A stretch of 64,000 bases of DNA from Hemiscyllium ocellatum (lineage: Eukaryota), in NCBI RefSeq assembly GCF_020745735.1, contig NC_083409.1:15285873-15349872 (forward strand), in the 5' to 3' direction. Position 1 is the first letter of the stretch; each line of letters opens with the position of its first letter. The notes under the pieces are model-generated. The model saw only the letters and a program-made list of their open reading frames with translations. It had not been told where the DNA came from and made no database searches. The position numbers and the translations under genes are program-made. Positions 37,977-64,000 of this stretch are shown one piece after another.

Positions 37977-38025
37977 AATAAAGATGAAGAAGATTCAGTC
38001 TCTGTCTCTGTGTGTGCTTTGGGAA
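37977..38025 (+). terminator. Polyadenylation signal of the kappa transcript
   Basis: First AATAAA after the C stop (37977-37982), followed about 18-40 nt later by a GT/T-rich element (TCTCTGTCTCTGTGTGTGCTTTGG). Confidence 0.7.
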
Positions 38026-38306: not shown

Positions 38307-38415
38307 ATTTGGAGAGAATGTGCAAAATCCACATAGATATTTTCCTGAGGCAGGGATCGAACCCAGGTCCCTGGCACTATGAAGAAGCAGTGCTAACCAC
38401 TGAGCCACCTTGTCA
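38307..38415 (-). mobile_element. SINE 5' (tRNA-head) fragment
   Basis: Reverse complement of GGTGGCTCAGTGGTTAGCACTGCT...GGGTTCGATCCC. Confidence 0.75.
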
Positions 38416-38606
38416 CCCACTATACTAACTTGATCCATCCCTGGTACAAAATATTCTGATGGCAATTCCCCCTCCACACCAACCCATCCATCAGGGACAG
38501 CAAGATCCTGAGCCAAGCAATTCAGATCAGGGTCACTGGGGTCACTCTATTGATCAATATGATCAGCAGAATCTTGGAACTCAAAATAACAATTCCACAG
38601 GGTTTG

Positions 38607-41136: not shown

Positions 41137-42595
41137 CTATGTCTGCTTGTTGTCGGCTACATCAAACAACACCTCACCAGTACATGCACAGGCACCATTC
41201 CCCAAATCATCCACCATTACATCAGCGACTGCATCAGTGCTGCATCCACCACCCAGGCTGAACTGGAGCAGTTCATCGACTTTGCTAACAACCTCCAACC
41301 TGCCCTTTAATTCACATAGTCCATCTTGGACAAATCCTTCTTCTTTCTTGATTGCTCCATTTCCATCTCCGGTGACAGTCTAGGATCAGACATTTACTGT
41401 AAATCCACAGACTCTCACAACGACCTCCTCCCAACCAGTATCCTGCAAGAACACCCTCCCGTTTTCCCAATTCTTCCATCTCCGTCATGTCTGCTCGAAC
41501 GAGGAGACGCTCCACTCCCAAGTGTCCCAGATGTCCACTTATTTTGAACAATGTACTTTTCCCACCTCTGCCATCCAGAAAGCCCTCCACCGCACCTCCT
41601 CCATTCTCTGCTCCCCAAATTTAAACACTCCCCTCCAAAATGCAATAAAGACAGGGTCCCCCTTGTCTTCACCTTACGTCCAATCAATCTCCGCATCCAA
41701 CGTATCATCCTCAAACAATTCTGACAACTCCAGCTCGACCCCACTATCAAGAACATCTTCCCCTCCCCACCCCTCTCTGCCTTCCACAAGGACTGTTCCC
41801 TTTGCCAATCCTTGGTTTTCACCACACTTCACACCTACCCCCTCCTCCCCCAACAAAACCCTGGTACCTTCCCCTGCAACTGTAAAAGATGCAAAACCTG
41901 CCCACACACCAAACCCTGTCATTTCCATCCAGGGCCCCAGTCCTTCCAGGTCAGACAGAGGTTCACCTGCCTCTCCTCCAACCTAGTTTATTGTATCTGG
42001 TGCACCCGTTGTGGTCTTCTCTGCATCGGTGAGACCAAACATAAACTAAGGACATGTTTTGATGAGCATCTCAGCCAGGCTCACAAAGGCTGACCTGGCC
42101 TCCCAGTCACTGCCTATTTCAATTCTCCTTCCTATTCCCTCTCTGACATGACTATCCTCTGCCTCCTCCATTACCATAAGCAATCAGACTGCAAATTGGA
42201 GGAACAAATAATTATCTTTTGCCCGGGGTTGCTTACAACCCAAAGGAATCAACATTGAGTTCTCCAGTTTCAAAAAGTCTCCCTTTTCCAACTTTCGACT
42301 CCCTTTCCAGTCCCCCTCCTCCATTCTATTCCACTTATGGACCCACCCTTCCAGCCATCAAATGGATTCATTCCTCCCATCGACTAAGCACTTCCAACCC
42401 TCTACCTGTGTTCATCCATCAATACCTTCCACTCCACCATTCCCCTCCACCCACGCAAACAACCGATCCCACCTTGATTTGCAGCTCCCCTTACCCCCAC
42501 CTGCAGTTCTGAAGAAGGGTTATACCCGAAATGTTGACTGCTCCACCTCCAGATTCTGCCTGACTTGCTGTGTTCTTCCAGCCTCCTGTAAGCCT
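41137..42595 (+). mobile_element. Penelope-like retroelement (RT C-terminal part + GIY-YIG endonuclease + terminal repeat), degenerate
   Basis: YVCLLVGYIKQ, YISDCI, FLDCSISI, DIYCKSTDSH and RFTCLSSNLVYCIWCTRCGLLCIGETK (GIY-YIG), plus a terminal hammerhead core. Confidence 0.9.
42503..42541 (+). ncRNA. Minimal type I hammerhead ribozyme motif in the Penelope terminal repeat
   Basis: Stem I GCAGTT/GACTGC; core CTGAAGA; stem II GGGT-TAT-ACCC; GAAA; GTT cleavage triplet at 42533-42535. Confidence 0.65.
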
Positions 42596-43454
42596 CCATC
42601 CCAGCCTGGTAACGATCTCGGACACTGGAAGGAAATGCCCAGGGCGCAGGTTAACGTGGTGCAAAAAGCCTTTCAGCTGAAGCTTCAGTGTTTGCCTTCA
42701 GTGTGGATTTTCAGTTACTGATTTACTCCCCTGTTATGTGACAGGAAGAAAGAACACTTGTTGGTGCAGTGTTTTTTTGTAATCGTCCCAGGATATTTAA
42801 AGCTGCCTGCACAGTGCAATCACCTTCACAAGACAAAATGCTGAGATCCCAAAATCAGCAAACGAATGATGAGACAAATCCTTTTGGTGGCATTAGTTGA
42901 ATATTGAGCAGGATGCCTGAGGGAATCTCTTCAGAATGGGATCTTGTCGAGCCCCCTGAGGTGGAGGGATTGGGGTCTGGGTGGTGCTGGTGGGGCTTTA
43001 AATGAACATCCCATACATAATATTGTGTCAGAGTTCACTGCAGTCTCAACCTGGATTCTGTGTTCTCATTTCTGAGGTGGCTTTCAATGCAATGACCATT
43101 TGACTCTGAAGCAGGAGCATTGCCCATGGAGTCACCGTCAGTAACAATGTAAACTGTGTGGCTCTGAAAGGATATCATCTCATTCATCAAATCTGTTTCT
43201 GCCCCTCTGCAGGCTGACCAGGCTGCTGATGCCTTTCCAATACTCCCAGGTTTTCCCATGTGCCACAGCTCATTCTCCTGAAGGATAGTTTACTCAGAGT
43301 CAAAAAGTGTGGTGCTGGAAAAGCACAGCTGGCCAGGCAGTTGTGCTCAGGCCGAGGACATGACCTTGTCCCTCTGTCAGATTCTCTTCGAGAAACTCAT
43401 GGCTCACCACCGCCCTCTCCAGGACAGTTAGGGAAGGGCAACAGCAAGGAGAGA

Positions 43455-43761
43455 GATTAGATTAGATTACTTACAGTGTGGAAACAGGCCCTTCGGCCCA
43501 ACAAGTCCACACCGACCCGCCGAAGCGCAACCCACCCATACCCCTACATTTGTCCCTTACCTAACACTACGGGCAATTTAACACGGCCAATTCACCTGAC
43601 CCGCACATCTTTGGACTGTGGGAGGAAACCGGAGCACCCGGAGGAAACCCACGCAGACACGGGGAGAATGTGCAAACTCCACACAGTCAGTCGCCTGAGG
43701 TGGGAATTGAACCCGGGTCTCAGGCACTGTGAGACAGCAGTGCTAACCACTGTGCCACCGT
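43455..43761 (-). mobile_element. Young HE1-like SINE, present only in Y copy 1
   Basis: (GATTA)n tail at 43455; the equivalent site in Y copy 2 (~58860) is empty. Confidence 0.93.
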
Positions 43762-45805
43762 GGTGGGGACGCGTTGCTCGCGTCGCTGCAAGTGCTGTAC
43801 TCTGCAGTTTGGTGACCCACTTTGATAGCTGTTTGTTCAATCTTTGAGTGCAATTCATTTTTTTGCTGATCCCAGCGTCAATCCAAAGGACTCTCCACCT
43901 TTCAATCTGACAAACCAGGTTCACCCATGTCATGGCTCTGTTTCTGACCGAGAGTCCAGTCTTTCAAAGAGATGAATTCAAGCCTCACCAATTTGATCAT
44001 TTTAATTTTACATCATTTCTCCTGATTTCTCCCGGGATGGGGCGGGCGTTGACGTGTTGGTTATTGGTTGCCTTCCCCTAATTGTCCTGGAGAGGGCGGT
44101 GGTGAGCCATGTAATATCTGGAAAGGAAGGCGCTGGAATTTGTACAAAAAAAGACATGAAATTCAATGTGATGTCCACAAATGTTCTTTTGGCGAGGGAG
44201 CCTGGTCTGTGACTCCTGCCCCACCGTGACATGATCCATTTTTAATGACCCTATGATCTGGCTCAGCAAAGAACTTAGTCCAAGCAACTGGGGGTGGGCA
44301 ATATTTATGAAGCTCACCAATGATGAAGCAGAAATAATAATGAGAAGGAATAATGCAGCTCCTTGCTCTCTGCCTTTTAGCCTCTGAGCCAGCACACTCT
44401 CACCGTTCTGGGTTTCTAATCCTCTAACATTAATTCATTAAAGTGTGGGAATATATGAAGAGGTTTTATTTTGAACTATAAGGTCTCTTTTCTCCGTGAC
44501 TCTCTCCTTTTCAACCCCCTACAATTCTGTCACCAGATGCTTGTGCTGACAGCCTTGTTGTGCAGAGTGAAAGCTCTCGGTGCTCTCTGAGGCCTCACTG
44601 CCTTGTGTCTGTCTCCACTGCAACATAAGACAAATGACGTGTTGCTAAAACCCTGTTGAAATTAAAAGCCAGCAAAGAAAATGACTGCAACAAGAATTGA
44701 GTTGGTCTTGTTCAAAAAAATAATTTTCATTTTAAAATTATATTTTTGTCAGTGAGTGACAAAGGAAAGATGGGGGTCCAGGATTGCTGCAGCCTCTGTC
44801 AGAACATAGGACCTAGGAGCAGGAGCAGGCCTTTTGGGAGCTGCTGTGCCAATGAAGAAGATCACTGCTCATCTGGTTATGGTCTCGCCCGTACGTTCTG
44901 CTTCCCCACCCCCTCCCATTATCCTTAATTGCCTTGTTCATCAAAAAGTCTGTCGACTGTAACCTTGTGCCAACTCCATGAGTGAACCTCCATCCCCATG
45001 TAGAGAAGAAAATTCCACAGACTATCAACCCTCAGCAAGAAAATCCCTCCTTCCCTTTAAACTGGAGACTGGTTTGTGTTAAACCTGCCCTCCAGTCCTC
45101 GTCTGCCCGATAACAGGAACCACCCTCTCAGTGTCCAGCCTGTGATGTCACCTTCAGATCAGAAACTGTTAATGAGAGAGAACAGGTTACATCAGTCAGA
45201 CTTTTCCCCAGAGATGATGAACAGTGTTGATGTAAATTGCTTTCTCCAGTCCGAGTCCAGAACAAGAGGGTTGTTAAAATTGTAATTCAGACGATTTCAG
45301 GAAAATTTCTTTCCGACAGAGTGATGGAAATCTGGAACCCTCAATCCAAAATAAAAAGCTGTTGAGGTTGGGTTTCAATATCCATTTTCTCAGGGCAGTA
45401 CGGTTTACAGGACAAAGGGAGAATGTATTCCAGGTCAGCCATGGCCTGATTAACTGGGGAACTAGGTCAAAGCAACTGATTGGTCATTCCCACTGGAATC
45501 CACTGGAATGACTACTGGTGTGTTTGCGGCTAATGGAAGGAGTCATTACCCATAGTCTTCAGCAGCTGTGCAAGTCCTCCATAGTAACTAGAAAGCAGCT
45601 GTTTCACTGTGCCTGAACAATACAAAGTCAGAGGACTCACTACACCAGGTTCTAGCCCAACTGATTCATTTGAAATCACAAGCTTCTGAAGCGCTGCTCC
45701 TTTATCAGGTGTACCCCAGTCCACCATCGACATTTCCACATTACTGAACAGTCCAAATAAACTGGGGCTCTGTGAGGATCGAACCAGCTGGATCTGTACA
45801 AACGA

Positions 45806-45806
45806 G

Positions 45807-45838
<32 letters not shown>

Positions 45839-45848
45839 GAGAGAGAGA
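45806..45848 (+). repeat. (GA)n microsatellite
   Basis: Near-perfect GA run; the paralogue at ~60864-60946 is roughly twice as long. Confidence 0.95.
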
Positions 45849-46319
45849 ACATCTTTTGAACCAGGATACCTAATTGCACCACAATAAAAATGCTCTGCAT
45901 GCTGTGATATATCAAAAATAAGCACTTTGGTGTAACTTTTGATTGTCCTCACAGTGTGCTATTTTATTCATGATGTGATACACGGAGACTATGTCAACGT
46001 TGGGTGGCAAAAAGTATATTTTCTCCACTAATCCCTTTCCAAAACGCGCTCTCCATCTTGCTTTAATCCTTATTGACTCTTCTACAATTGCCTCTATTTC
46101 CTCACTCCTTTCCGGTCCCAAAGGAACATATGGACAGACTTCATGACCCCACTCTGTCTTAAGTTCCATGTGTAGTGTATTGGAGCTTCGGCTCCTCCCT
46201 CAGGCCCAGGTGTAGGGGCCTGTTCAACAATCTGCACATTGTCCTTTGTCTCTTTCTGAATGAACTGGATCAAGTTGCAGTAACGATCTGGCAACAAGGT
46301 GTCTTGTCTAAAATGTTCC

Positions 46320-47290
46320 CAGCATTGGATACAGAACTGGCTGTGTCAGAGGAGAGAGCATAGTGATGGAAGGATGGATTTCAGAATGGAGGGCTGTGTC
46401 TTGTGGGGTTTTGCAGGGATCAATGATGGGACCTTTGCTGTTCATGGTCTCCATAAGTGATTTGGACGAAAACATGGCTAGTCTAATTCATGAGTTTGTG
46501 GATGCCACAAAGATTGCTGGAGTTGCAGTTAATGATCAGATTATCAGAGGATACAGCAGGACATAGATCAATTGGATGCGTGGATAGAAAATGGCAGATG
46601 AAGTTTAATCCAAATAAATGTGAAATGATGCATTTTGAAAGATGAAGCACGTGGCAGAATACCTGCACAGTGAATGGCAGAATCCATTGGAGTATTGAAA
46701 TGCAGAGGGATCTCGGTGTACATGTTCACAGATCACTGAGAGTGGCAGCACCGAAGGTAGTAAAAAAGGCAATGGCAGGCTTGGCTACATTGGGAGGAGC
46801 ACTGAGTATTAGGATAGACAAGTTATACTGCAGCTTTACTGAACTTTAGTTTGGCCACACTGGGAATATTGCATATGGTTCTGGTCACTATGACCAGAAG
46901 GATGTGGATGCTTTGGAGAGGGTACTGAAAAAATGTACCAAGAATGCTGTCTGATATGAGGGATTTTCCCAGGGTAGAGGGGTCAGTTACTAGGGGACAC
47001 AGGTACAAGGTGTGGGAGGGGATGGGTGGGTGCAGTGGGGAATTAAAACAGATGTGTGAGGTAAGTATTTCACACAAACGGTGGTGAGGGCTGGAACACG
47101 CTGCCAGTGGAAGTGGTGGAAGCAGACACAATAGCAGCATTCAAGAAATACCTGGATGAATACACGGAAAAGAAGGGAATAGAGGGATATGAATCCTGTA
47201 GGTGAATACAGTTTCGGTGAGGAAGGGCAAAATGTGTCAACACAGGCTGGGAGGGCCGAAGGGCCTGTTCCTGTGCTGTATAGTTCCTTG
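46320..47290 (+). mobile_element. Degenerate CR1 3' portion (inverted paralogue of 30-1120; second copy ~61420-62390)
   Basis: WISEWRAVSCGVLQG and EFVDATKI fragments. Confidence 0.82.
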
Positions 47291-47984
47291 TTCTTTGGTC
47301 CCTGCTGTTGAATTGGATTCAAACCAACAATGCAGGAAGACTCATGATGAAGTGGGTGTTTGTTTGATTTCTCACTTGTGTTAATACAGTTTTAAATGTG
47401 TCTGCGTACTTTCCCCTCTCTCTCTGTGGAGGGTGTCACTGTCATTGTCTCCACCCGACCTTTCCACTCTCATAGTGATAGCAGTTTTTGCATTCCTTCT
47501 GTTCGGGGGAGCTGTCATTCCCCCGCCCATATTACAACAATGACTAGACTTTGGAATTTCTCCATTAGCTGTAAAACATCTTTGAACATCCTGAGCTCAT
47601 GAACAGTGTAACAGAAGGGCAATTCTCTCTCCTTTTTGTTTCCTCTCCATGCCTTCCCATCTGTCTCCCCACAACATCCCTCCCTTGTTTAAAATCTGGA
47701 ATGAATTATGAATCTCTGGGAGAATTTAATCTGTGGCAACATTGAGACTAACAACAACCACCTCCTTGGTGGGCTTTGAGTGTGAAGGTCAATAACACTC
47801 TCACTGGGACTTGATCTGGGTTGTCTCCAGTCAGTCAGTGTTATTGTTCTGGGGCCAGACATTACTGACCCACCTTAGACCCTGTGATCTGATTGAGATG
47901 ACGGATGACCTGCACTGGGCTTTAACACACTGTTACCACAGCACAGAGTGAAATCATGTAGCGCTGGTTAGGCAGAATCCCTGG

Positions 47985-49135
47985 AGCAGGAGAGTCGACG
48001 TTTTGAGCATAAGCTCTTCATCAGGAATGGAGAGGAGGGAGTGAGGAGTCAGAGAGATAAATAGGAGGGAATTGGGGCTGGGGAAAATGTAATGAAGATT
48101 GCAATAGGTACGTGGAGGTGGGGGGTGACAGTGATAGGTCAGAGTGAAGGGTGGAGTGGATAGGTGGGAAGGAAGATGGACAGGTAGGACAGTTCAAAAG
48201 GGTGGTGCCGAGTTGGAGGGTTGGATCTGGGATAAGCTGGGGGAGTGGAGATGAGGAAACAAGTAACATCAACATTCAGAGTATTGAATACAGGAGTTGG
48301 GAGGTCATGTTGCGGCTGTACAGGACATTGGTTAGGCTACTGCTGGAATATTGCATGCAATTCTGGTCTCCTTCCTATCGGAAAGATGTTGTGAAACTTG
48401 AAAGGGTTCAGAAAAGATTTACAAGGATGTTGCCAGGGTTGGAAGATCGGAGCTACAGGGAGAGGCTGAACAGACTGGTGCTGTTTTCCCTGGAGCATCA
48501 GAGGCTGAGTGATAACCTGATAGAGTTTTACAAAATTACGAAGGGCATGGATAGGATAAATAGACAACATCTTTTCCCAGTGGTTGGGGAGTCCAGAACT
48601 AGAGGGCATAGGTTTAGGGTGAGAGGAGAAAGATACAAAAGAGACCTAAGGGGCAACTTTTTCACGCAGAGGGTGGTATGTGTATGGAATGAGCTGCCAG
48701 AAGATGTGGTGGAGGCTGGTGCAATTGCAACATTTAAGAGGCATTTGAATGGGTATATGAATAGGAAGGGTTTGGAGGGAGATGGGCTGGGTGCTGGCAG
48801 GTGGGACTAGATTGGGTTGGGATATCTGGTCGGCATGGACGGGTTGGACTGAAGGGTCTATTTCCATGCTGTACATCTCTATGACTCTATGACTCTATAA
48901 CATTCATTCCGTGTCATTGGAGGGTCTCAAGGTGGAAGATGTGGTGTTCTTCCTCCAGTTGTTAGATGGCTTCAATTTGGCGGTGGAGTAGGCCTAGGGA
49001 CTTGCATATCCTTAGCAAGTGGATGGGGAGTTGAAATGGTCGGCCACAGGGTGGTGGGGTTGTTTAGTGTGTGTGTCCTGAAGATATCATCTTCCAATCC
49101 TCCAATGAAGATGCACTGTCCTCACCAAAACATGT
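47985..49135 (-). mobile_element. Penelope-like 3' fragment split by a CR1 insertion
   Basis: Minus strand carries CTGATGAAGAGCTTATGCTCAAAACGTCGAC (decayed hammerhead) and a GIY-YIG-region remnant beyond the CR1. Confidence 0.7.
48279..48898 (+). mobile_element. 5'-truncated CR1 with 8-bp target-site duplication (second copy 63377-63996)
   Basis: Open C-terminal ORF (IEYRSWEVMLRLYRTLVR...RWD), (CTATGACT)n tail, and AACATTCA at 48271-48278 and 48899-48906. Confidence 0.93.
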
Positions 49136-49455
49136 TGGCAAATCTCTTCATAACACATAAAGGGAGAGAAACATTGAAAACTGTATTATCATGAGTGAGA
49201 GTCCATTTAAAACAAGGACTATGATGTTAAATGCTCCCAGCCGTAAAGAACACTGGTGTATTGATGTCATTATCTTATTAAACAATATTAAAACCTCAGC
49301 CAAACATTTTCCTGCAGACAGTGTATTTAAAATATCAAGAGGCTTTCCCCATTGTTGGTTTGATCAGTGACGTAACAAGGAAGCAGCAGCTGCCCCATGA
49401 ACTCCAACAAAAGAATGAGAACAGGCTCTTCATATGGAGCTGGCTCCCGAGAATC

Positions 49456-52400
49456 CAATTCAACAGCAGGGACCAAAGAACAAGGGACAATACAGCACAG
49501 GAACAGGCCCTTCGGCCCTCCAAGCCTGTGCTGATACATTTTGCCCTTCTATACTGAAACTATCTTCATCGACAGGATTCATATCCCTCTATTCCCTTCC
49601 TATTCATGCATTAGTGCAGGAATTTCTTGAATACTTCTATTGTGTCTGCTTCCACCCCCTCCTCTGGCTGTGTGTTCCAGGTAGTCAACTTCCACTGTGT
49701 GAAATACTTGGTTTGTACACCTCTTTACAATGAATTCCCCCAAACCCCTGCACCTTGAACCTGCGTCCCCTAGTATTTGACCCCCTCCACCCTGGGAAAA
49801 AGTCTCATTATTTCCACTCTGCCTATCCCATTCACAACTCTGTAAACTTCTATCAGGACACACCTCATTTTCCTGCATTCCAGTGAAAACAAATCCAGTC
49901 TCTCCAACCTTTCTTCAGAACTACAATCCCCCCATACCAGACAATATCCTGGTAAACATTTTCTGCACCGTCTTCAAAACATCCACATCCTTCTTTTTGG
50001 ACTGTGTGCAGTTCTATGCAACCAGAACTGTGTGCACTATTCCAAGTGTGGCCGAACTAAAGTTCTTTCAAGCTGCAGCATAACTTGTCTGTCCTTACAC
50101 TCAATGCCCCTTCCAATGAAGGCAACCAGGCCATCAGCCTTTTTTACTGCCTTACCTCCCTGTGCTGGCACCTTCAGTGGTCTGTGAACATACACACCCA
50201 GATCCCTCTGCATATCAATACTCCAAAGGATTCTGTCATTCACTGTATAATTCCCACCTGTACATCACCTTCCAAAATGCATCACCTCACATTTGTCTGG
50301 ATTAAACTACACCTGCCATTTTTCTGTCCAAGCATCTCTATCCTGCTATATCCTAGATAATCCTTCTCATTCTCTGCACTTCTACCAATCTTTGTATCAA
50401 TTGTAAAATTCCTCATTAGACCAGCTACGCTTTCCTCCAAATCATTTATGTAGACCATATACAGCAGAGTTCCCTGTGGAACACCACGAGTCACAGCCCT
50501 CCATTCTGAAAACCATCCCCCCATCACTGCCCTCTGTCTCCTCCTACTCAGCCAGTTCTGTGCCCAATGCTGGAAACATTTTAGACAAGACACCTTGTCG
50601 CCAGCTCTTACTGCAACTTGATCCAGTTCATTCAGAAAGAGGAAAAGGACAATGTGCAGATTGTTGAACAGGCCCCTACACCTGGTCCTGAGGCAGGAGC
50701 CCAATCTCCAACACACTGGCCTCACTTCACACCAACCTTCACACAGTGCGGGGTCATGAATACCGGCCATCAATCCCTCTGGGACCGGGACGGGGTGGGG
50801 GAACAGGGACAATTGTAGAAGAGTCAATAAGGAGTAAAGAAAGATGGAGAGAGTGTGTTGGAAAGTGTTCAATGGAGGGAACATACCTTGCGATACCCAA
50901 TACTGACAGAGTCTCCATGTATCACAGAATGTACAAAACAGCACTCCAGTAATGTGGCTGACCCTTACCTGCCATTTAAAAGGCTAAAGAAGCCACTCAG
51001 TTTCAGGACAGGTAGGGATGGGGAACAAATGCTGGTCTTGCCAGTGACTCCCACATTCCAGAAAAGAATAGATGGGTTCAGTGATAACACCGTCACCTGC
51101 ACCTGCAGGTTTCAAGCCCCATTCCAGACACTGGAGCACCGTCCTGAGGCTGGCAAAGGTAAAGACGCCATCTGCTGGATGATCGGTTAAACCACTGCCC
51201 TCTCAGGTCGATGTGAATATAAGGGCTTTGTGACCATCTCAGGGAAACTCTCCCCAGTGTGCTGACCAATGCTTCTCTTATAACCAATGGCATTAACACA
51301 GATACATAAACAAAATACTGCAAATCTCAAATAGAAGCTCGATGCTGGAGAAAGGGAACAGGTGCAGCCTCTGTGGGAGAGGAGGTTTAACTTTTTGGGT
51401 TCAGTGATGTTTTATCAAAAAGGCAGCAAAATTATATTTTATTTAATTTTATGCTGTTTTATATTATTTTCTTTAAATTTTGTTGAAAACAAGGTTACCC
51501 GCTTGATTGGAACCACATTCACACACATGCATTCCCCCCACACCGACGCTCAGTAACAGCTCTGTGTACTATTTACAAGATGCACTGCAGAGATTCACCA
51601 AAGATCCTGAGACAACAGCTTCCAAACCCATGACCACTTATATTTGGACAAGGACAGCAGGTACACGGGACCATCACCCCAGCAAGTTCCTCTCCAAGTC
51701 ATTCACCAGTTTGACTTGGAAATATGAATCAGTTCCTACATCATCACTGGCTCAGAATCCTGGAATTCCCCTCCTATGACATTGTGGGTCTACCAACAGC
51801 AGACTGACTGCAGGGGTTCAAGATGGCAGCTAATCACCACCAGGTCCAGGGCAATTAGAGATGGACAGTAAAAAGCCTGGTACAAGAGAGTGTAAATGTG
51901 CTTAAGGACCAGAAAGTGAGACTGCGATGTTTCAGTTATTCCTGGACATTGGTGTGACCACATCTCAAATACTGAGGGTAGTTTTGGTCTCCCTATTGAA
52001 GGAAGAATATAAATGCATCGGAGGTGGTTCACAGGAATTTTACCCGATTGATCCCTGGAATGAGTGGGCTGTGATGAGGAAAGATTGGAAAAGGAGATAA
52101 AGGGAATGGGGCGGAGCAGGGTGTTGAGGTAGGGATAGGTTGAGAATGGTAGAGAATATGACCTGATGAGTCGATGGGAGAGTAATTTGTATTCATCCCT
52201 CCCATCAACCAATCCTCTACCTACCTTCACCTATCCCCATCTCACCACCCTGCCCCCCACTACTCCCTTTATCTGCAGCTCCCCCATCATTCCCCCACCT
52301 CCCAACCCACCCCCATTCCTGAAGAAGGATTACAGCCAAAACATTGATTTCTCCACCTCCTGATGCTGCCTGGCTTGCTGTGTTCTCCCAGCCTCCTGCT

Positions 52401-54021
52401 TGTCAACCTTGGATTCCAGCATTTGCACTTTCTTTTGTCTCTAATCTCTTCAGGGGCCTGGATGAGAGTGAGGGAATTGGGTTTTGATGGAGCTACCCAC
52501 AGACTCAAGTCAAAAGAAGCAAAGCAGGAAAGGCAAGTGGATCGAATACAAGAGACCAAATTGTGAGCAAAAACCAATTATTACTAGTTTAGCAATTGCA
52601 AAGCAGAGAGTGACAACATTGAATTGCTTCTGGTGTCATCCTCTGTGCCCTAACATTTCACAGTGCCAGCTCCACATCCTTCCATTGGCTTTGTCATTGA
52701 GAGGCAACAGTTCCCTTCCCACAGCATAGAACATAGAACATAGAAAAATACAGCGCAGTACAGGCCCTTCGGCCCTCAATGTTGCGCCGACCGAATCCTA
52801 CCTAACCTACACTAGCCCAATAACTTCCAAATGCCTATCCAATGCCCGTTTAAATGACCATAAAGAGGGAGAGTTCACCACTGCTACTGGCAGGGCATTC
52901 CATGAACTCACAACCCGCTGTGTAAAGAATCTACCCCTAACATCTGTCCTACACCTTCCACCCCTTAATTTAAAGCTGTGTCCCCTTGTAACAGCTGACT
53001 CCATTAGCGGTAAAAGGTTCTCAGTGTCTACCCTATCTAAACCCCTAATCATCTTATACACCTCTATCAAATCTCCCCTAAACCTTCTTTTCTCCAATGA
53101 GAACAGCCCCAAGTGCCTCAGTCTTTCCTCATACGATTTTCCTACCATACCAGGCAACATCCTGGTAAACCTCCTCTGCACTCGTTCCAATGCCTCCACA
53201 TCCTTCCTATAGTATGGCGACCAAAACTGCACACAATACTCCAGATGAGGCCGCACCAGAGTCTTATACAACTGCAACATGACCTCAGGACTCCGGAACT
53301 CAATTCCTCTGCCAATAAAGCCCAGTATACCATATGCCTTCCTCACAGCACTATTTACCTGGGTGGCGACTTTCAGAGATCTGTGTACATGGACACCAAG
53401 ATCCCTCTGCTCATCCACACTACCAAGTAGCCTACCATTAGCCCAGTAATCCATCTTCTTGTTACTCCTACCAAAGTGAATGACTTCACACTTAGCTACA
53501 TTGAATTCCAATTGCCACCTTTCTGCCCAGCTTTGCAACTTGTCTATATCCCGCTGTAACCTGCCACATCCTTCCTCACTATCCACAACTCCACCGACTT
53601 TTGTGTCATCCGCAAACTTACTCACCCAGCTTTCAAGCCCCTCCTCTAGATCATTTATAAAGATAACAAAAAGCGATGGTCCCAAAACAGATCCTTGAGG
53701 TACACCGCTAGTAACTGCACTCCAAGATGAACCTATACCATCAACTACTACCCTCTGTCTCCTTCCAGCCAGCCAATTTCTAATCCAAACCTCTAATGCA
53801 CCCTCAATGCCATACCTCCGTAGTTTTTGCATTAGCCTACCATGGGGTACCTTATCGAACGCCTTACTAAAATCCATATACACAACATCTACTGCTTTAC
53901 CCTCGTCCACCTCCTTAGTCACCTGCTCAAAGAACTCAATAAGGTTTGTGAGGCACGACCTGCCCTTCACAAAACCATGCTGACTATCCTTGATCACGTT
54001 ATTCCTATCCAGATGTTCATA
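49456..54021 (+). repeat. Segmental duplication block X, copy 2
   Basis: Matches 1-4563 and ends abruptly inside the CR1 at ...CAGATGTTCATA|CACTCAGG. Confidence 0.95.
52725..54021 (-). mobile_element. Young CR1 LINE fragment with an uninterrupted 405-codon RT/C-terminal ORF, cut by the duplication junction
   Basis: ORF 52807-54024 with all RT motifs and the same (TTCTATG)n tail. Confidence 0.96.
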
Positions 54022-56177
54022 CACTCAGGGGGTTTGGATTGGAAGCTGAGTTGTAAGAATCCTGATACATCAGGGAGGGGCAGCGATACCTGGAGACTTT
54101 GTTCCAGATGGAAGGTGTAAGCCTCAGGACTGGGCAGTCCGATTCCATGTTAGTAAGGGGCAGGAGGGTATGGCCCAAGAGGGGGTCAGGTAAAGTTTTG
54201 GAGAATAAAGTGGGACAGGAAAACCCCCCACTCTTCGAAACTCCAGTGAGAACAAGGCCAGCCTTTCCAATTCTTCCTCATCACACAGACCCCTCATACC
54301 AGGGATCAGTCGGGTAAAACTCCTCTGAAACACTTCCAATGGATTTATATTCTTTCTGCAATTAGGAGACCAAAAGTTCATACAAACTTTGAGATGTTCA
54401 GAACAAACTGAAACATCACATTCTCACTTTCAGATCCCTAATCACACCTGCTCTTACTTTGCACCAGCCTTGTTACTGTCCATTTCTCATTGTCATGTAC
54501 ACAGTGGCGCTGAGCTGCTTTCTTGAACCGCTGCAGTCTGTGTGCTGTAGGTAGACCCAGAATGTGCAGAGGAAGGGGATTCTCGGATTCTGACACAGTA
54601 ACAATGTAGGAACAGTGATATATTTCCATATCAGAATGCTAAATGGCTTGAGGGGAACGTGCAAAGACCGGTGTTCCTGTGTATCTGCTACCATGTCCTT
54701 CTTGATGGAAGTGGTCATGGGTTTGGAAGGTACTCTCTCAGGATCTTTGCTGAACCTCTGCAATGTATCTTGTAGATAGTGCACACAGCTGTTACTGAGG
54801 GTCAATGTGGAGACAATGGATATATGTCGATGTGGTGCCAATCAAGCCGAGAGAAATTTGATAAACAAGATTTAAATAAAACAAAATAACATAAAACAGG
54901 TTAAAATTAAATAAAATCATCAAAAACTGTGGTGTCTTTTTGATAAAACATCACTGAATCCAAAACATTATTCCCTCCTCTCTCTAAAGCAGCTGCACCT
55001 GTTCCCTTTCTCCAGCATCTTGTTTTATTTGAGATTTGCTGTATTTTACTCTTGTATCTGTTTTAATGCCATTGGTTATAAGAGAAGCATTGGCCAGCAC
55101 ACTGGGGAGAGTTTCCCTGAGATGGTCACAAAGCCCTTATATTCACATCGACCAGAGAGGGCAGTGGTTTAACCGATCATCCAGCAGATGGCGTCTTTAC
55201 GTTTGCCAGTCTCAGGATAGTGCTCCAGTGTCTGGAGTGGGGCTTGAAACCTGCAGGTTCAGGTGACTGTGTTACTGAGGCCGTCTATTCTTTCCTGGGA
55301 TGTGGGTGTCACTGACAAGACCAGCATTTGTTCCCCATCCCTAACTGCCCTGAAACTGAGTGGCTTGCTGGGCCTTTCAAATGTCAGGTAAGGGTCAGCC
55401 ACATTGCTGGAGTCCTGGCAGAGTCAGATGTCTACAACAGGTCTACAAGAACAGGACCCTTCTGCCCAATGAGCCAAAGCCAGTCAAACAACCACCTCAC
55501 TATTCTAATTCCATGTTCCAGCACTCAGTCCATAGTCCTGTGTGCCTTGGTATTACAGCTGCACACCGAAATACTTCAATGATATGGGAGAGCTTCTGCC
55601 TCAACCATTCTTACAGAAAGCAAGTTACAAATTACCACCACCTACTGCACGAAAGTGTGTTTCCTCATATTCCTTCTTAATTTTCAGCCATTTCTCTTAA
55701 ATCTATGCCCCCGGTCATTGATCATGAAATAACTCCACATCATCAAGTCACCCTTTATTTACACATCAACCATCCTTGACTGTAATGTCTCAAATAGAGT
55801 TAGGCACCAGAGGCACAGGGTCCCTAACACCCAACCTGTTTGATGTCAGTAAGTCATCTCCCTGTTATATCCTTGTAAAGATTCGAGCTTTTCTTGTGAA
55901 ACTCCTTTGGGATTTTTTAATGGCACAGAGTCTCCCACACACTCCCATCTCTCTTGATGCACACCCTTGTCTGGTTAATTCTTCCCATTTCCTTCTCTTC
56001 TTTCAGCTCATCCCATTTCAATAAAGTCTGTGATATTTCCATGGAGGATGTGTACTTGAAACCGCCAGAGAGAAGTTCCTATGAAGAAGCACTACAATAG
56101 AAGGAAGGCTGATATTTGCAGGAAGCCTGGACTGTGCCCTTGTGAACCTTTTCCAAACATTTCCATGTGATCTGTCA

Positions 56178-58015
56178 GCCTCCTTCAACTCTTCCCATTT
56201 CCTCCAAATCCAGTGGGTGACCATGGGTCCCAGCTATGTCTGCTTGTTGTCGGCTACATCAAACAACACCTCACCAGTACATGCACAGGCACCATTCCCC
56301 AAATCATCCACCATTACATCAGCGACTGCATCAGTGCTGCATCCACCACCCAGGCTGAACTGGAGCAGTTCATCGACTTTGCTAACAACCTCCAACCTGC
56401 CCTTTAATTCACATAGTCCATCTTGGACAAATCCTTCTTCTTTCTTGATTGCTCCATTTCCATCTCCGGTGACAGTCTAGGATCAGACATTTACTGTAAA
56501 TCCACAGACTCTCACAACGACCTCCTCCCAACCAGTATCCTGCAAGAACACCCTCCCGTTTTCCCAATTCTTCCATCTCCGTCATGTCTGCTCGAACGAG
56601 GAGACGCTCCACTCCCAAGTGTCCCAGATGTCCACTTATTTTGAACAATGTACTTTTCCCACCTCTGCCATCCAGAAAGCCCTCCACCGCACCTCTTCCA
56701 TTCTCTGCTTCCCAAATCTAAACACCCCTCTCCAAAATGCAATAAAGACAGGGTTCCCCCTTGTCTTCATCTTACACCCCACCAATCTCCGCATCCAACG
56801 TATCAGCCTCAAACAATTCTGCCAACTCCAGCTAGACCCCACCACCAAAGCATCTTACCCTCCCCACCCCTCTCTGCCTTCCACAAGGACTGTTCCCTTT
56901 GCCAATCCTTGGTTTTCACCACACTTCACACCTACCCTCCCCCCCACCCCCCCCCCCAACAAAACCCTGGTACCTTCCCCTGCAACCGTAAAAGATGCAA
57001 AACCTGCCGACACACCACCCCTGTCATTTCCATCCAGGGCCCCAGTCCTTCCAGGTCAGACAAAGATTAGATTAGATTAGATTAGACTTACAGTGTGGAA
57101 ACAGGCCCTTCGGCCCAACAAGTCCACACCGACCCGCCGAAGCGCAACCCACCCATACCCCTACATTTACCCCTTACCTAACACTACGGGCAATTTAGCT
57201 TGGCCAATTCACCTGACCGCACATCTTTGGATTGTGGGAGGAAACCGGAGCACCCAGAGGAAACCCACGCAGACACGGGGAGAACATGCAAACTCCACAC
57301 AGTCAGTCGCCTGAGTCGGGAATTGAACCCGGGTCTGCAGGCGCTGTGAGGCAGCAGTGCTAACCACTGTGCCACCGTGCCGCCCAAGGTTCACCTGCCT
57401 CTGCTCCTACCAAGTTTATTGTATCCGGTGCACCCGTTGTGGTCTTCTCTACACTGGTGAGACCGAACTTAAACTAAGGGCATGTTTTGCTGAGCATCTT
57501 AGCCATGCTCACAAAGGCTGACCTGGCCTCCCAGTCACTGCCTATTTCAATTCCCCTTCCTATTCCCTCTCTGACATGACCATCTTCTGCCTCCTCCATT
57601 GCCACAAACAATCAGACTGCAAACTGGAGGAACAAATAATTATCTTTTCCCTGGGGTAGCTCAGAACCCAGAGGAATCAACATTGAGTTCTCCAATTTCA
57701 AAAAGCCTCCCTTTCCCAACTTTCGACTCCCTTTCCAGTCCCCCTCCTCCATTCTATTCCACTTACAGACCCTCCCTTCCAGCCACCAAATGGATTCATT
57801 CCTCCCATCGACCAAGCACTTCAAACCCTCTATTTGTGTTCATCCATCAATACCTACCACTCCACCATTCCCCTCCACCTACCCAAACAACTGATCCCAC
57901 CTTGATTTGCAGCTCCCCCTACCCCCACCTGCAGTTCTGAAGAAAGGTTATACCCGAAATGTTGACTGCTCCACCTCCAGTTCTGCCTGACTTGCTGTGT
58001 TCTTCCAGCCTCCTG
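56178..58015 (+). mobile_element. Penelope-like retroelement, copy 2 (longer at its 5' end, SINE-interrupted)
   Basis: SFNSSHFLQI..MGPSYVCLL RT motif, GIY-YIG region and hammerhead core at 57931-57969. Confidence 0.9.
57065..57385 (-). mobile_element. Young HE1-like SINE, present only in Y copy 2
   Basis: Inserted in the Penelope GIY-YIG region with AAG on both sides; the equivalent site at ~41960 is empty. Confidence 0.93.
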
Positions 58016-60902
58016 TAAGCCTCCATCCCAGTCTGATAACCATCTCGAACACTGGAAGGAAATGCCCAGGGTGCAGGTTAACGTGGTGCAAAAAGCCTTT
58101 CAGCTGAAACTTCCGTGTTTGCCTCCAGTGTGGATTTTCATTTGCTCATTGCTCCCCTTTTACATGATAATGGAGAGAGAACTCTTGTGGGTGCAGTTTT
58201 TTTTTAAATTGTCCCAGGATATTTAAAGTTGCGTGTGCAGTGCAATCACCTTCACAAGACAAAATGCTGAGGTCCCAAAATCAGCAAATGAATGATGAGA
58301 CAAATATGTTTTGGTGGCATTGGATGAATATTGAGCAGGATACCCGAGGGAATCTCTTTTAGAATGGGACCTTGTCGAGCCCCCTGAGGTGGAAGGATTG
58401 GGGTCTGGGTGGTGCTGGTGGGGCTTTAAATGAACATCCCATACATAACATTGTGTCAGAGTTCAATCCAATGACCATTTGACTCTGAAGCAGGAACATT
58501 GCCCATGGAGTCACCGTCAGTAACAATGTAAACTGTGTAGCTCTGAAAGCCTGAGTCTGTATTTCAGCTTAGAAGGATATCATTTCATTCACCAAATCTG
58601 TTTCTTCCCCTCTGCAGGCTGACCAGGCTGCTGGTTCCTTTCCCACACTCTCACGTTTTCCCATGTGCCACAGCTCATTCTCCTGAGGGATAGTTTGCTC
58701 GGAGTCGAAAAGTGTGGCGCTGGAAAAGCACAGCAGGTCAGACAGTTGTGCTCAGGCCGAGGACATGACCTTGTCCCTCTGTCAGATCCTCTTTGAGAAA
58801 CCCATGGCTCACCACCGCCCTCTCCAGGACAGTAAGGGAAGGGCAACAGCAAGGATAGAGATGGGGATACGAAGCTGCAAGTGCTGCACTCTGCAGTTTG
58901 GTGACCCACTTTGATATCTGTTTATTCGATCTTTGAGTGTAATTCATTTTTTTGCTGATCCCAGTGTCAATCCAAAGGACACTCCACCTTTCAGTCTGAC
59001 AAACCAGGGTCACCCATGTCATGGCTCTGTTTCTGGCCGAGAGTCCAGTCTTCCAAAGAGATGAATTGAAGCCTCACCAGTTTAATCATTTTAATTTTAC
59101 ATCATTTCTCCTGATTTCTCCAGAGCGGGCGTTGCCTTTCCCCAATTGTCCTGGAGAGGGCGGGGGTGAGCCATGTAATACCTGGAAAGGAAGGCGCTGG
59201 AACCTGTACAAAAAAGACATGAAATTCAATGTGATGTTCACAAATGTTCTTTTGGCGAGGGTGCCTGGTCTGTGACTCCTGCCCCACCGTGACATGATCC
59301 ATTTTTAATGACCCCATGATCTGGTTCAGCAAAGAACTTAGTCCAAGCAACTGGGGGTGGGCAATAAATATGAAGCTCACCAATGATGAAGCAGAAATAA
59401 TAATGAGAAGGAATAATGCAGCTCCTTGCTCTCTGCCTTTTAGCCTCTGAGCCAGCACACTCTCACCGTTCTGGGTTTCTAATCCTCTAACATTAATTCA
59501 TTAGAGTGTGGGAATATAGGAAGAGGTTTTATTTTGAACTATAAGGTCTCTTTTCTCCGTGACTCTCTCCTTTACAACCCCCTACAATCCTGTCACCAGA
59601 TTCTTGTACTGACAGCCTTGTTGTGCAGAGTGAAAGCTCTCGGTGTTCTCTGAGGCCTCACTGCCTTGTGTCTGTCTCCACTGCAACATAAGGCAAATGA
59701 CGTGTTTCTGAAACCCTGTTGAAATTAAAAGCCAGCAAAGAAAATGACTGCAACAAGAATTGAGTTGGTCTTGTTCAAAAAAATAATTTTCATTTTAAAA
59801 TTACATTTTTGTCAGTGAGTGACAAAGGAAAGATGGGGGTCCAGAATTGCTGCAGCCTCTGTCAGAACATAGGGCCCAGGAGCAGGAGCAGGCCTTTTGG
59901 GAGCTGCTGTGCCAATGAAGAAGATCACTGCTCATCTGGTTATGGTCTCGCCCGTACTTTCTGCTTCCCCATCCCCTCCCATTATCCTTAATTGCCTTGT
60001 TCATCAAAAAAATCTGTCGACTGTAACCTTGTGCCAACTCCATGAGTGAACCTCCATTCCCATGTAGAGAAGAGAATTCCACAGACTATCAATCCTCAGC
60101 AAGAAAACCCCTCCTTCCCTTTAAACTGGAGACTGGTTTGTGTTAAACCAGCCCTCCAGTTCTCATCTGCTCGATAACAGGATCCACCCTCTCAGTATCC
60201 AGCCTGTCATGTCACCTTCAGATCAGAAACTGGTAATGAGAGAGAACAGGTTACATCAGTGAGACTTTTCCCCAGAGGTGATGAACAGTGTTGATGTAAA
60301 TTGTTTTTTCCGGTCCCAGAGTCCAGAACAAGAGGGTTGTTAAAATTGTAATTCAGACGATTTCAGGAAAATTTCTTTCCGACAGAGTGATGGAAATCTG
60401 GAACCCTCAATCCAAAATAAAAAGCTGTTGAGGTTGGGTTTCAATATCCATTTACTCAGGGCAGTACGGTTTACAGGATAAAGGGAGAATGTATTCCAGG
60501 TCAGCCATGTCCTGATTAACTGGGGAACTAAGTCAAAGCAACTGATTGGTCATTCCCACTGGAATCCACTGGAATGACTACTGGTGTGTTTGCGGCTAAT
60601 GGAAGGAGTCATTACCCATAGTCTTCAGCAGCTGTGCAAGTCCTCCATAGTAACTAGAAAGCAGCTGTTTCACTGTGCCTGAACAATACAAAGTCAGAGG
60701 ACACACTACACCAGGTTCTAGCCCAACTGATTCATTTGAAATCACAAGCTTCTAAAGCGCTGCTCCTTTATCAGGTGTACCCCAGTCCACCATCGGCATT
60801 TCCACATTACTGAACAGTCCAAATAAACTGGGGCTCTGTGAGGATCGAACCAGCTGGATCTGTACAAACGAGGAGAGAGAGAGAGAGAGAGAGAGAGACA
60901 GC

Positions 60903-60948
<46 letters not shown>

Positions 60949-63900
60949 ATCTTTTGAACCAGGATACCTAATTGCACTACAATAAAAATGCTCTGCATGC
61001 TGTGATATATCAAAAATAAGCACTTTGGTGTAACTTTTGATTGTCCTCACAGTGTGCTATTTTATTCATGATGTGATACACGGAGACTATGTCAACGTTG
61101 GGTGGCAAAAAGTATATTTTCTCCACTAATCCCTTTCCAAAACGCGCTCTCCATCTTGCTTTAATCCTTATTGACTCTTCTACAATTGCCTCTATTTCCT
61201 CACTCCTTTCCGGTCCCAAAGGAACATATGGACAGAGTTCATGACCCCAATCTGTCTTAAATTTCATGTGTAGTGTGTTGGAGCTTGGGCCCTTCCCTCA
61301 GGCCCAGGTGTAGGGGCCTGTTCAACAATCTGCACATTGTCCTTTGTCTCTTTCTGAATGAACTGGATCAAGTTGCAGTAACGATCTGGAAACAAGGTGT
61401 CTTGTCTAAAATGTTCCCAGCATTGGATACAGAACTGGCTGTGTCAGAGGAGAGAGCATAGTGATGGAAGGATGGATTTCAGAATGGAGGGCTGTGTCTT
61501 GTGGGGTTTCACAGGGATCAATGATGGTACCTTTGCTGTCCATGGTCTCCATAAGTGATTTGGACGAAAACATGGCTAGTCTAATTCATGAGTTTGTGGA
61601 TGCCACAAAGATTGCTGGAGTTGCAGTTAATGATCAGATTATCAGAGGATACAGCAGGACATAGATCAATTGGATGCATGGATAGAAAATGGCAGATGAA
61701 GTTTAATCCAAATAAATGTGAAATGATGCATTTTGAAAGATGAAGCACGTGGCAGAATACCTGCACAGTGAATGGCAGAACCCTTTGGAGTATTGAATTG
61801 CAGAGGGATCTGGATGTACATGTTCACAGATCACTGATGGTGGCAGCACCTAAGGTAGTAAAAAAGGCAATGGCAGGCTTGGCTACATTGGGAGGAGCAC
61901 TGAGTATTAGGATAGACAAGTTATACTGCAGCTTTACTGAACTTTAGTTTGGCCATACTTGGAATATTGCATATGGTTCTGGTCACCATGACCAGAAGGA
62001 TGTGGATGCTTTGGAGAGGGTACTGAAAAAATGTACCAAGAATGCTGTCTGATATGAGGGATTTTCCCAGGGTAGAGGGGTCAGTTACTAGGGGACACAG
62101 GTACAAGGTGTGGGAGGGGGTGGGTGGGTGCAGTGGGGAATTAAAACAGATGTGTGAGGTAAGTATTTCACACAAACGGTGGTGAGGGCTGGAACACGCT
62201 GCCAGTGGAAGTGGTGGAAGCAGACACAATAGCAGCATTCAAGAAATACCTGGATGAATACACGGAAAAGAAGGGAATAGAGGGATATGAATCCTGTAGG
62301 TGAATACAGTTTCGGTGAGGAAGGGCAAAATGTGTCAACACAGGCTGGGAGGGCCGAAGGGCCTGTTCCTGTGCTGTATAGTTCCTTGTTCTTTGGTCCC
62401 TGCTGTTGAATTGGATTCAAACCAACAATGCAGGAAGACTCATGATGAAGTGGGTGTTTGTTTGATTTCTCACTTGTGTTAATACAGTTTTAAATGTGTC
62501 TGCGTACTTTCCCCTCTCTCTCTGTGGAGGGTGTCTCTGTCATTGTCTCCACCCGACCTTTCCACTCTCATAGTGATAGCAGTTTTTGCATTCCTTCTGT
62601 TCGGGGGAGCTGTCATTCCCCCGCCCATATTACAACAATGACTAGACTTTGGAATTTCTCCATTAGCTGTAAAACATCTTTGAACATCCTGAGCTCATGA
62701 ACAGTGTAACAGAAGGGCAATTCTCTCTCCTTTTTGTTTCCTCTCCATGCCTTCCCATCTGTCTCCCCACAACATCCCTCCCTTGTTTAAAATCTGGAAT
62801 GAATTATGAGTCTCTGGGAGAATTTAATCTGTGGCAACATTGAAACTAACAATAACCACCTCCTTGGTGGGCTTTGAGTGTGAAGGTCAATAACACTCTC
62901 ACTGGGACTTGATCTGGGTTGTCTCCAGTCAGTCAGTGTTATTGTTCTGGGGCCAGACATTACTGACCAACCTTAGACCCTGTGATCTGATTGAGATGAC
63001 GGATGACCTGCACTGGGCTTTAACACACTGTTACCACAGCACAGAGTGAAATCATGTAGCGCTGGTTAGGCAGAATCCCTGGAGCAGGAGAGTCGACGTT
63101 TTGAGCATAAGCTCTTCATCAGGAATGGAGAGGAGGGAGTGAGGAGTCGGAGAGATAAATAGGAGGGAATTGGGGCTGGCGAAAATGTAATGAAGATTGC
63201 AATAGGTACGTGGAGGTGGGGGGTGACAGTGATCAGTCAGAGTGAAGGGTGGAGTGGATAGGTGGGAAGGAAGATGGACAGGTAGGACAGTTCAAAAGGG
63301 TGGTGCCGAGTTGGAGGGTTGGATCTGGGATAAGCTGGGGGAGTGGAGATGAGGAAACAAGTAACATCAACATTCAGAGTATTGAGTACAGGAGTTGGGA
63401 GGTCATGTTGCGGCTGTACAGGACATTGGTTAGGCTACTGCTGGAATATTGCATGCAATTCTGGTCTCCTTCCTATCGGAAAGATGTTGTGAAACTTGAA
63501 AGGGTTCAGAAAAGATTTACAAGGATGTTGCCAGGGTTGGAAGATTGGAGCTACAGGGAGAGGCTGAACAGACTGGTGCTGTTTTCCCTGGAGCATCAGA
63601 GGCTGAGTGATAACCTGATAGAGTTTTACAAAATTACGAAGGGCATGGATAGGATAAATAGACAACATCTTTTCCCAGTGGTTGGGGAGTCCAGAACTAG
63701 AGGGCATAGGTTTAGGGTGAGAGGAGAAAGATACAAAAGAGACCTAAGGGGCAACTTTTTCACGCAGAGGGTGGTATGTGTATGGAATGAGCTGCCAGAA
63801 GATGTGGTGGAGGCTGGTGCAATTGCAACATTTAAGAGGCATTTGAATGGGTATATGAATAGGAAGGGTTTGGAGGGAGATGGGCTGGGTGCTGGCAGGT

Positions 63901-64000
63901 GGGACTAGATTGGGTTGGGATATCTGGTCGGCATGGACGGGTTGGACTGAAGGGTCTATTTCCATGCTGTACATCTCTATGACTCTATGACTCTATAACA

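What the first reader, a model, noticed from the sequence alone, without database searches (positions are those of the whole stretch)
54010..54040. Gene-less copy of the 49.5-kb kappa unit: a junction that removes an entire V-J-C cluster
X recurs at a period of 49455 bp. In the second unit the sequence jumps from the equivalent of 4563 (inside the young CR1, ...GATGTTCATA) straight to the equivalent of 40435 (CACTCAGGGGG...), with no microhomology. The skipped 35871 bp contain the upstream island, promoter, V, J, C, polyA site and candidate 3' enhancer. The simplest reading is a tandem array of X-[cluster]-Y units in which unit 2 lost its Ig gene through one germline deletion after the CR1 inserted, i.e. 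cluster death captured in place. It predicts another X block starting near 64550, just beyond the window, and possible copy-number polymorphism of kappa clusters.
Basis: partly seen in the sequence, partly recalled or inferred. Interest (0 to 1): 0.7.

Follow-up and report, generated by a model that had tools for sequence, protein, structure and literature searches.

The report
Shark kappa array unit missing its gene
In a shark antibody light-chain (kappa) gene array, one repeat unit keeps its flanking DNA but has no gene, most likely because a recent clean deletion cut it out, which is ordinary turnover in a very large gene family.

Summary
Bases 1-4563 recur at 49456-54021 (99.2%). At 54021|54022 the sequence jumps, with no shared or added base, to the equivalent of 40435 and follows 40435-48902 to the window end. 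The skipped 35,871 bp hold an intact V-J-C kappa cluster. Nothing Ig-like lies in 40435-64000.

A deletion is the best reading.
- **Polarity:** the break cuts a CR1-like LINE that runs about 310 bp further in unit 1, as the family does in thousands of copies.
- **Timing:** the LINE copy sits 1-2 bases from its family's majority sequence, so the break is recent. The first 3 kb right of the break differ by about 7% from unit 1 (4.5% over the next 1.5 kb), so that flank existed long before.

Identity is mosaic: 0.4-0.9% divergence in X, 7% falling to 0.6% along Y, plus a 462-bp exact tract. Unit 2 is therefore not a plain copy of unit 1.

Not shown:
- what was lost is inferred by analogy with unit 1;
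- the predicted next X block could not be checked;
- junction-specific words occur in one raw run of the probable source animal, which argues against misassembly but does not show polymorphism.

This is ordinary birth-and-death decay. Other notes of this scan record similar decay on other DNA of this genome, for example a J-less cluster.

The parts
1..4563 (.). X1: left flank block of unit 1. Its left end is unseen because homology starts at window base 1.
   Evidence: 99.2% to 49456-54021
3272..4880 (-). CR1-like LINE in unit 1. Its 3' end with short tandem repeats lies near 3268-3272, and its 5' end near 4850-4882.
   Evidence: RT reading frame on the minus strand. 3' end and family copy number from contigs. 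It carries a 1-bp loss at 3791 relative to X2.
4564..40434 (.). Interval of unit 1 with no counterpart in unit 2 (35,871 bp). It contains a 13-N gap at 8820-8832.
26160..26486 (+). Kappa V exon (26160-26458) with heptamer 26459-26465, 12-bp spacer and nonamer 26478-26486.
   Evidence: Pfam V-set 2.3e-18; sequence
26895..26968 (+). J segment: nonamer 26895-26903, 23-bp spacer, heptamer 26927-26933, J coding 26934-26968, then a GTAAGT donor.
37157..37485 (+). Kappa C exon including the stop codon.
   Evidence: Pfam C1-set 7.5e-23; acceptor site
40435..48902 (.). Y1: right flank block of unit 1. It starts 2.95 kb behind the C exon.
48903..49455 (.). Z: stretch between Y1 and X2. Its partners would lie outside the window on both sides.
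49456..54021 (.). X2: second copy of X.
52728..54021 (-). The same LINE in unit 2, cut at its 5' side by the junction. It has a 405-aa open RT frame.
   Evidence: Pfam RVT_1 1.8e-29. Summed contig depth falls from about 1e6 to about 1e2 at 54022.
54021..54022 (.). The junction: blunt, with no shared and no added base.
   Evidence: All 5 sampled junction words are held by run X2.
54022..64000 (.). Y2: second copy of Y, cut by the window end. It has no V, J or C.
54750..56233 (.). 1,484 bp present in Y2 and missing in Y1 at 41141/41142, with CT microhomology. Other copies carry the Y2 state, so this is a private loss in Y1.
   Evidence: contig 54720-54987 in run X1
41137..41598 (.). 462-bp tract identical to 56234-56695, set within about 7% divergence. 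It starts at the edge of the Y1 loss.
43454..43762 (.). SINE-like element private to Y1.
57069..57379 (.). SINE-like element private to Y2. The overlapping span 57077-57386 is 98.4% identical to 31816-32126.
47023..48902 (.). Distal Y, only 0.59% different from 62121-64000. With Z and X2 it forms a recently homogenised tract of 7 kb or more.

Best explanation
Unit 2 of a tandem kappa array lost the DNA between its left flank (X2) and its right flank (Y2) through one recent germline deletion, repaired by blunt end joining. The left break fell inside a young CR1-like LINE. The right break fell about 3 kb behind where a C exon lies in unit 1. Y2 was already an old, separate copy of the cluster's 3' flank. 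X2, together with distal Y, belongs to a tract that units have exchanged recently by gene conversion or unequal crossing-over. The lost DNA most likely held a V-J-C cluster. Shown: the junction, the polarity, the relative ages and the absence of Ig exons. Inferred: end joining as the repair route, the content and size of what was lost, and that the event occurred within one chromosome.
For: (1) Polarity. In unit 1 the LINE continues past 4563 in frame for about 310 bp. Contigs from thousands of family copies continue behind 54021 with the same text as unit 1, matching 21 of 22 letters (table 7). X1 and X2 share the LINE's 3' junction within one continuous alignment. Unit 2 is therefore the shortened state.
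(2) The LINE is the same insertion in both units. Both carry T at 4321/53779, where 94-100% of family depth reads C.
(3) Timing. X2's LINE differs from the majority letter at 1-2 of 1,294 sites. X1 and X2 differ by 0.39% in the LINE and 0.86% beside it. Y 40435-41141 and 41599-43457 differ by 6.6-7.5% (Fisher p 6e-51). Each Y copy has a private SINE, and Y1 has a private 1,484-bp loss. Y2 therefore predates the junction and must once have had another left neighbour.
(4) In all four runs, contigs fit from exactly 54022 rightwards and carry 153-312 other letters on the left. Their depth is about three times that of Y2-private contigs (table 8). Other copies of Y therefore have a different left flank.
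(5) The junction is blunt.
(6) All 5 sampled junction words are in Logan contigs of run X2. The junction is therefore in raw data.
Against: No listed contig bridges the junction. Only one run, from the probable source animal, holds the junction words. The undeleted state of this unit was not seen in any individual or species. Sequence beyond 64000 is unseen, so the array context downstream is unknown. The upstream context rests on unchecked notes. Contig depths are not copy numbers. A deletion and a non-homologous unequal exchange leave the same product.
Confidence: 0.62

Rival explanations
1. Spacer duplication with no gene lost. A tandem duplication of Y-Z-X (40435-54021) across a unit boundary made the X|Y junction. 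The final order of blocks is the same as after a deletion.
For: The two models cannot be told apart by block order alone. Distal Y (0.59%) and the 462-bp exact tract are as alike as a young duplication would be.
Against: The junction cuts a LINE that is 1-2 bases from its family majority, so a duplication that made it would be equally young. Yet 40435-45252 differs by 4.5-7.5% and carries private SINEs and a 1.5-kb indel. Rescuing the model needs a later conversion of about 5-6 kb that starts exactly at the junction.
Confidence: 0.07
2. Deletion by homologous recombination between two same-orientation copies of the young LINE. The second copy would have been 5'-truncated exactly where Y2 now begins.
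For: The family has roughly ten thousand copies at 95% identity or more, which makes it a good substrate. A LINE 5' junction is also blunt.
Against: Unit 1 has no LINE at 40434. X2 shares with X1 the rare T at 53779, 242 bp from the junction, and the last 346 bp are identical. The exchange would therefore have to lie in the last 242 of 1,294 bp. It also needs one more insertion event.
Confidence: 0.08
3. Assembly artefact: a false join inside the repeat, or two haplotypes laid in tandem.
For: No listed contig spans the junction. The left side is a very high-copy repeat.
Against: All sampled junction 31-mers are in the contigs of a raw run. A false join in a repeat would leave repeat sequence on both sides, but here the repeat stops dead. 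X1 and X2 differ at 36 sites. Y2-private text occurs in four runs from two studies. Y1 and Y2 are too unlike to be alleles.
Confidence: 0.05
4. A real deletion, but not of one live 35.9-kb cluster. It removed several units, or a cluster that was already dead or differently built.
For: X2 and proximal Y2 have different histories, so they need not come from one unit. Other notes of this scan report many decayed clusters in this genome (unchecked).
Against: Nothing speaks directly against it. Unit 1, and by unchecked notes the unit before it, carry one cluster each at about the same spacing.
Confidence: 0.2

Closest known systems
Birth-and-death evolution of immunoglobulin multigene families (Nei, Gu and Sitnikova 1997, as cited in PMC3308330). 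Includes the cluster-type VL-JL-CL loci of cartilaginous fishes (PMC3308330; PMC2193156).
   Same: There are many V-J-C clusters. Copies are gained by duplication and lost by deletion or decay. Gene conversion and unequal exchange occur within the loci.
   Different: Here one loss event is seen at base resolution, with both flanks kept and a paralogous undeleted unit beside it. The reviews read here describe gene counts and pseudogenes, not such junctions.
J-less kappa cluster noted elsewhere in this genome (scan note s1-195753, unchecked here).
   Same: A clean germline deletion disables one member of the same gene family.
   Different: That deletion is 230 bases and removes only J. This one spans tens of kilobases and leaves no Ig exon at all.
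Segmental deletion and duplication variants of mammalian Ig loci, such as human IGH and IGK haplotypes lacking blocks of V genes (from my own knowledge, not checked here).
   Same: Blocks of tens of kilobases are gained or lost within segmentally duplicated Ig loci.
   Different: Those are mostly repeat-mediated and known to be polymorphic. Here the joint is blunt and non-homologous, and polymorphism is not shown.

Membership tests
Cluster-type Ig light-chain array of cartilaginous fish | A self-contained V-J-C cluster with 12/23 recombination signals | tested here: met
   V with 12-RSS, J with 23-RSS and a C exon at 26160-37485
Cluster-type Ig light-chain array of cartilaginous fish | Repeated units in tandem | tested here: inconclusive
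   The X and Y flanks recur within the window. Only one cluster is visible. The unit upstream is known only from unchecked notes. Downstream could not be reached.
End-joining (non-homologous) deletion | A junction with no or very short homology between otherwise unrelated break sites | tested here: met
   0 bp shared and 0 bp inserted. The left site is a LINE and the right site is low-copy DNA.
End-joining (non-homologous) deletion | The undeleted ancestral state of the same locus is seen | not testable with these tools
   Only a paralogous unit (unit 1) is available. No allele or orthologue could be fetched.
Repeat-mediated (homologous) deletion | The same repeat, in the same orientation, at both break sites | tested here: not met
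   No LINE lies at 40434 in unit 1. The shared rare base at 53779 and the 346 identical final bases tie X2's LINE end to X1's. The lost unit itself cannot be inspected.
LINE insertion-mediated deletion | The LINE is absent from the undeleted state and its insertion coincides with the loss | tested here: not met
   The same insertion, with the same 3' junction, is in unit 1 and is about 310 bp longer there.
RAG/RSS-mediated germline deletion (as in germline-joined shark Ig genes, PMC2193156) | A heptamer and nonamer at the breaks | tested here: not met
   The left break has no CAC or GTG on either side. The right retained end starts CACTCAG but has no nonamer at 12 or 23 bp: about 3 of 9 bases match at the 23-bp spacing and the 12-bp candidate is equally poor. 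This was read. The breaks lie 21.6 kb before V and 2.95 kb behind C.

The most novel reading that the evidence does not exclude
The deletion still segregates. The junction words were found only in the probable source animal, while four other samples show Y2-private text. An undeleted allele with the 'lost' cluster might therefore survive in the population. That would give a live presence/absence polymorphism of a whole antibody gene cluster and a way to measure cluster turnover in sharks.
Probability: 0.15. Interest if true: 0.4.

Novelty: new member of a known kind. Interest (0 to 1): 0.2.

Why it matters
It gives a base-level example of how a shark antibody gene cluster disappears. One blunt deletion left the spacer DNA of a tandem unit behind. 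Spacer segments of neighbouring units are kept near-identical while the DNA next to the gene drifts. This is useful for annotating the roughly 200-copy kappa family, because gene-less units should not be counted as clusters. It is also useful as a marker for copy-number genotyping. It does not change how these loci are understood.

Tried and rejected
1. Reads across the junction. Only short Logan contigs were available. The LINE side is about ten-thousand-copy, and no listed contig bridges the junction, so this is neither support nor refutation.
2. Treating the contigs that start at 54022 as one real paralogue closer to Y2 than Y1 is. Rejected: they agree with Y2 at 54080-54086 and with Y1 at 54173-54196, so they are a collapsed majority path through several copies.
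3. Polymorphism from the junction-word search. Two of three DNA runs of the sample that has the junction also lack the words, so their absence from the four other-sample runs has no weight. That is roughly a 20% chance outcome even if the junction is present in all.
4. Reaching the sequence beyond 64000. Two exact look-ups of the Y2 open reading frame found nothing. A protein search found only LINE relatives at 75% identity or less from rays and sharks.
5. Looking for other gene-less units in the scan's notes: nothing. A sequence look-up of the 462-bp tract was blank, which means nothing by the operators' note.
6. Insertion of the cluster into unit 1 as the derived state. Rejected: the insert would have to begin with the exact continuation of the LINE.
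7. LINE insertion-mediated deletion, RAG-mediated deletion and a haplotype laid in tandem. Rejected, as set out under Membership tests and Rival explanations.
8. The LINE part of X (0.39%) differs less than the rest of X (0.86%), but not significantly (p 0.12). All 6 X1/X2 differences in the LINE are private to X1 (p 0.03). This is noted and not interpreted.

Full report
**Observation**

Bases 1-4563 recur at 49456-54021, over 4566 columns with 33 substitutions and 3 single-base indels, or 99.2%. The period is 49,455. At 54021|54022 the sequence passes from the equivalent of 4563 to the equivalent of 40435. From there it follows 40435-48902 in four blocks to the window end. The skipped interval is 35,871 bp. 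No base at the joint could belong to both sides, and none is added.

Homology starts at window base 1 and ends at base 64000. The true outer ends of both repeats are therefore unseen.

**What the window holds**

The skipped interval carries one intact kappa cluster:
- a V exon at 26160-26458 with heptamer, 12-bp spacer and nonamer;
- a J at 26934-26968 behind a nonamer, 23-bp spacer and heptamer, followed by a perfect splice donor;
- a C exon at 37157-37485. Pfam gives V-set 2.3e-18 and C1-set 7.5e-23.

tblastn with V and C finds nothing significant in 40435-64000. Open frames there are LINE remnants or low-complexity sequence. Unit 2 is therefore gene-less as far as Ig exons go.

The left break lies in a LINE on the minus strand, with Pfam RVT_1 at 1.8e-29. 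I call it CR1-like from its short tandem repeat at the 3' end. Its clade was not tested.

Earlier notes of this scan say the genome is a shark's, with about 200 kappa clusters. They place a V and a C-tail element about one period upstream of this window. These are unchecked leads.

**Read evidence**

- Summed depth over 52727-54021 is about a million, against about a hundred beside it. The LINE therefore belongs to a family of roughly ten thousand copies at 95% identity or more. This also explains why no listed contig crosses the joint.
- Behind 54021 the loose ends read on as the LINE does in unit 1.
- In every run a contig of 265-514 letters fits from exactly 54022 rightwards and carries 153-312 further letters that do not fit X2. 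Its depth is about three times that of contigs matching Y2-private text without a difference, such as 54242-54339.
- Comparison with Y1 shows that this contig is a collapsed majority path through several Y copies, not one real copy.
- It still shows that other Y copies have a different left neighbour, and that Y2-private text is present in all four samples.

A second search used only the 60 bases centred on the joint, so every 31-letter word crosses it. All 5 sampled words were found in one run of the sample marked as the possible source, and in no other run. The joint is therefore in raw data and not made by the assembler. It is not confirmed in a second animal. Two other DNA runs of that same sample also lack the words, so their absence elsewhere carries no weight.

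**Deletion, not insertion**

In unit 1 the LINE continues in frame for about 310 bp past 4563, as the family does. X1 and X2 share the LINE's 3' junction within one unbroken alignment. They also share a T at 4321/53779, where 94-100% of the family depth reads C. Both copies therefore descend from a single LINE insertion, and unit 2 carries the shortened form.

**Deletion, not spacer duplication**

A tandem duplication of Y-Z-X across a unit boundary would give the same order of blocks. Timing separates the two models.
- The joint cuts the LINE, so it is younger than the insertion.
- X2's LINE differs from the family majority at only 1-2 of 1,294 sites.
- X1 and X2 differ by 0.39% in the LINE and 0.86% beside it.
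- Y 40435-41141 and 41599-43457 differ by 6.6-7.5%, and 43785-45252 by 4.5%. The contrast with X has p = 6e-51.
- Each Y copy has a private SINE-like insertion (43454-43762 and 57069-57379). Y1 has a private 1,484-bp loss with CT microhomology. A contig shows the Y2 state across that point in other copies.

Y2 was therefore a separate copy long before the joint formed. It must then have had another left neighbour, which by analogy was a cluster tail. Something between X2 and Y2 was removed.

**Mosaic history**

Divergence along Y falls from about 7% to 2.0% (45253-47022) and to 0.59% (47023-48902). It is interrupted by a 462-bp exact tract at 41137-41598 = 56234-56695, which begins at the edge of the Y1 loss.

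Distal Y, Z and X2 together form a tract of 7 kb or more that matches the neighbouring spacers at over 99%. The young LINE lies inside this tract in both X copies. The tract must therefore have been copied between old units after the LINE landed, by gene conversion or unequal crossing-over.

A second sharply bounded near-identical tract lies at about 4981-5575, against an inverted copy of the cluster tail at about 38.7-39.3 kb. It confirms another note on this window and shows that patchy homogenisation is common here.

Unit 2 is therefore not a plain copy of unit 1. The 0.8% difference in X does not date the units.

**Mechanism**

A blunt joint between a LINE and unrelated low-copy DNA fits end joining of two breaks. 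This is inferred.
- **Recombination between two LINE copies.** This would need a second copy truncated exactly at the Y2 edge. It would also need an exchange within the last 242 bp, given the shared rare base and the 346 identical final bases. It is possible but unlikely.
- **LINE insertion-mediated deletion.** This fails because unit 1 has the same insertion, and a longer one.
- **RAG-type cutting.** This fails because there is no heptamer at the left break and no nonamer at the right one.

**What remains open**
- Whether the lost DNA was one live 35.9-kb cluster, a dead one, or several units.
- Whether another X follows near 64,554. Three attempts to reach beyond the window failed.
- Whether the deletion is fixed in the species.

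**Comparison and verdict**

Cartilaginous-fish light-chain genes are known to lie in many V-J-C clusters. Ig loci are known to evolve by duplication, deletion and gene conversion, the birth-and-death model (PMC3308330; PMC2193156). This finding is a clear, well-resolved instance of that process. It is a new case of a known kind and of modest interest.

Noticed in passing
window 41137-41598 and 56234-56695: A 462-bp tract is identical in Y1 and Y2 while both sides differ by about 7%. It begins exactly at the edge of the 1,484-bp loss in Y1, looks like a decayed transposon coding remnant, and lies about 3.7-4.1 kb behind the C exon. It may be a conversion patch or one of the 'conserved elements behind C' noted elsewhere. 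It survives in the gene-less unit.
   Followed up: partly
window 40435-48902 versus 54022-64000: Substitution divergence falls stepwise along Y: 6.9%, 0%, about 7%, 4.5%, 2.0%, 0.59%. It then sits at 0.86% in X. A tract of 7 kb or more (47023-54021) is kept over 99% alike between neighbouring spacers.
   Followed up: yes
window 4883-5841 versus 38443-39375 (inverted): An inverted copy of the cluster tail lies right behind the LINE in unit 1. It is 97-100% identical over about 4981-5575 and 78-86% at both ends. This confirms the sharply bounded tract in note s1-213779 and suggests a relic of an oppositely oriented cluster.
   Followed up: partly
window 52807-54024 (minus) and 3685-4620 (minus): The LINE copy in X2 keeps a 405-aa open RT frame and is 1-2 bases from the family majority. 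The X1 copy has a 1-bp loss, and all 6 X1/X2 differences in the LINE are private to X1. The family has roughly ten thousand copies at 95% identity or more, so it may still be active.
   Followed up: partly
window 31816-32126 and 57077-57386: Two copies of a roughly 310-bp SINE-like element are 98.4% identical, in opposite orientation. Further copies lie at 10853-11144, 29207-29517 and 43454-43762. This is a young family that inserted independently in Y1 and Y2.
   Followed up: no
window 8820-8832: A run of 13 N lies inside the interval that unit 2 lacks. It was left untouched.
   Followed up: no
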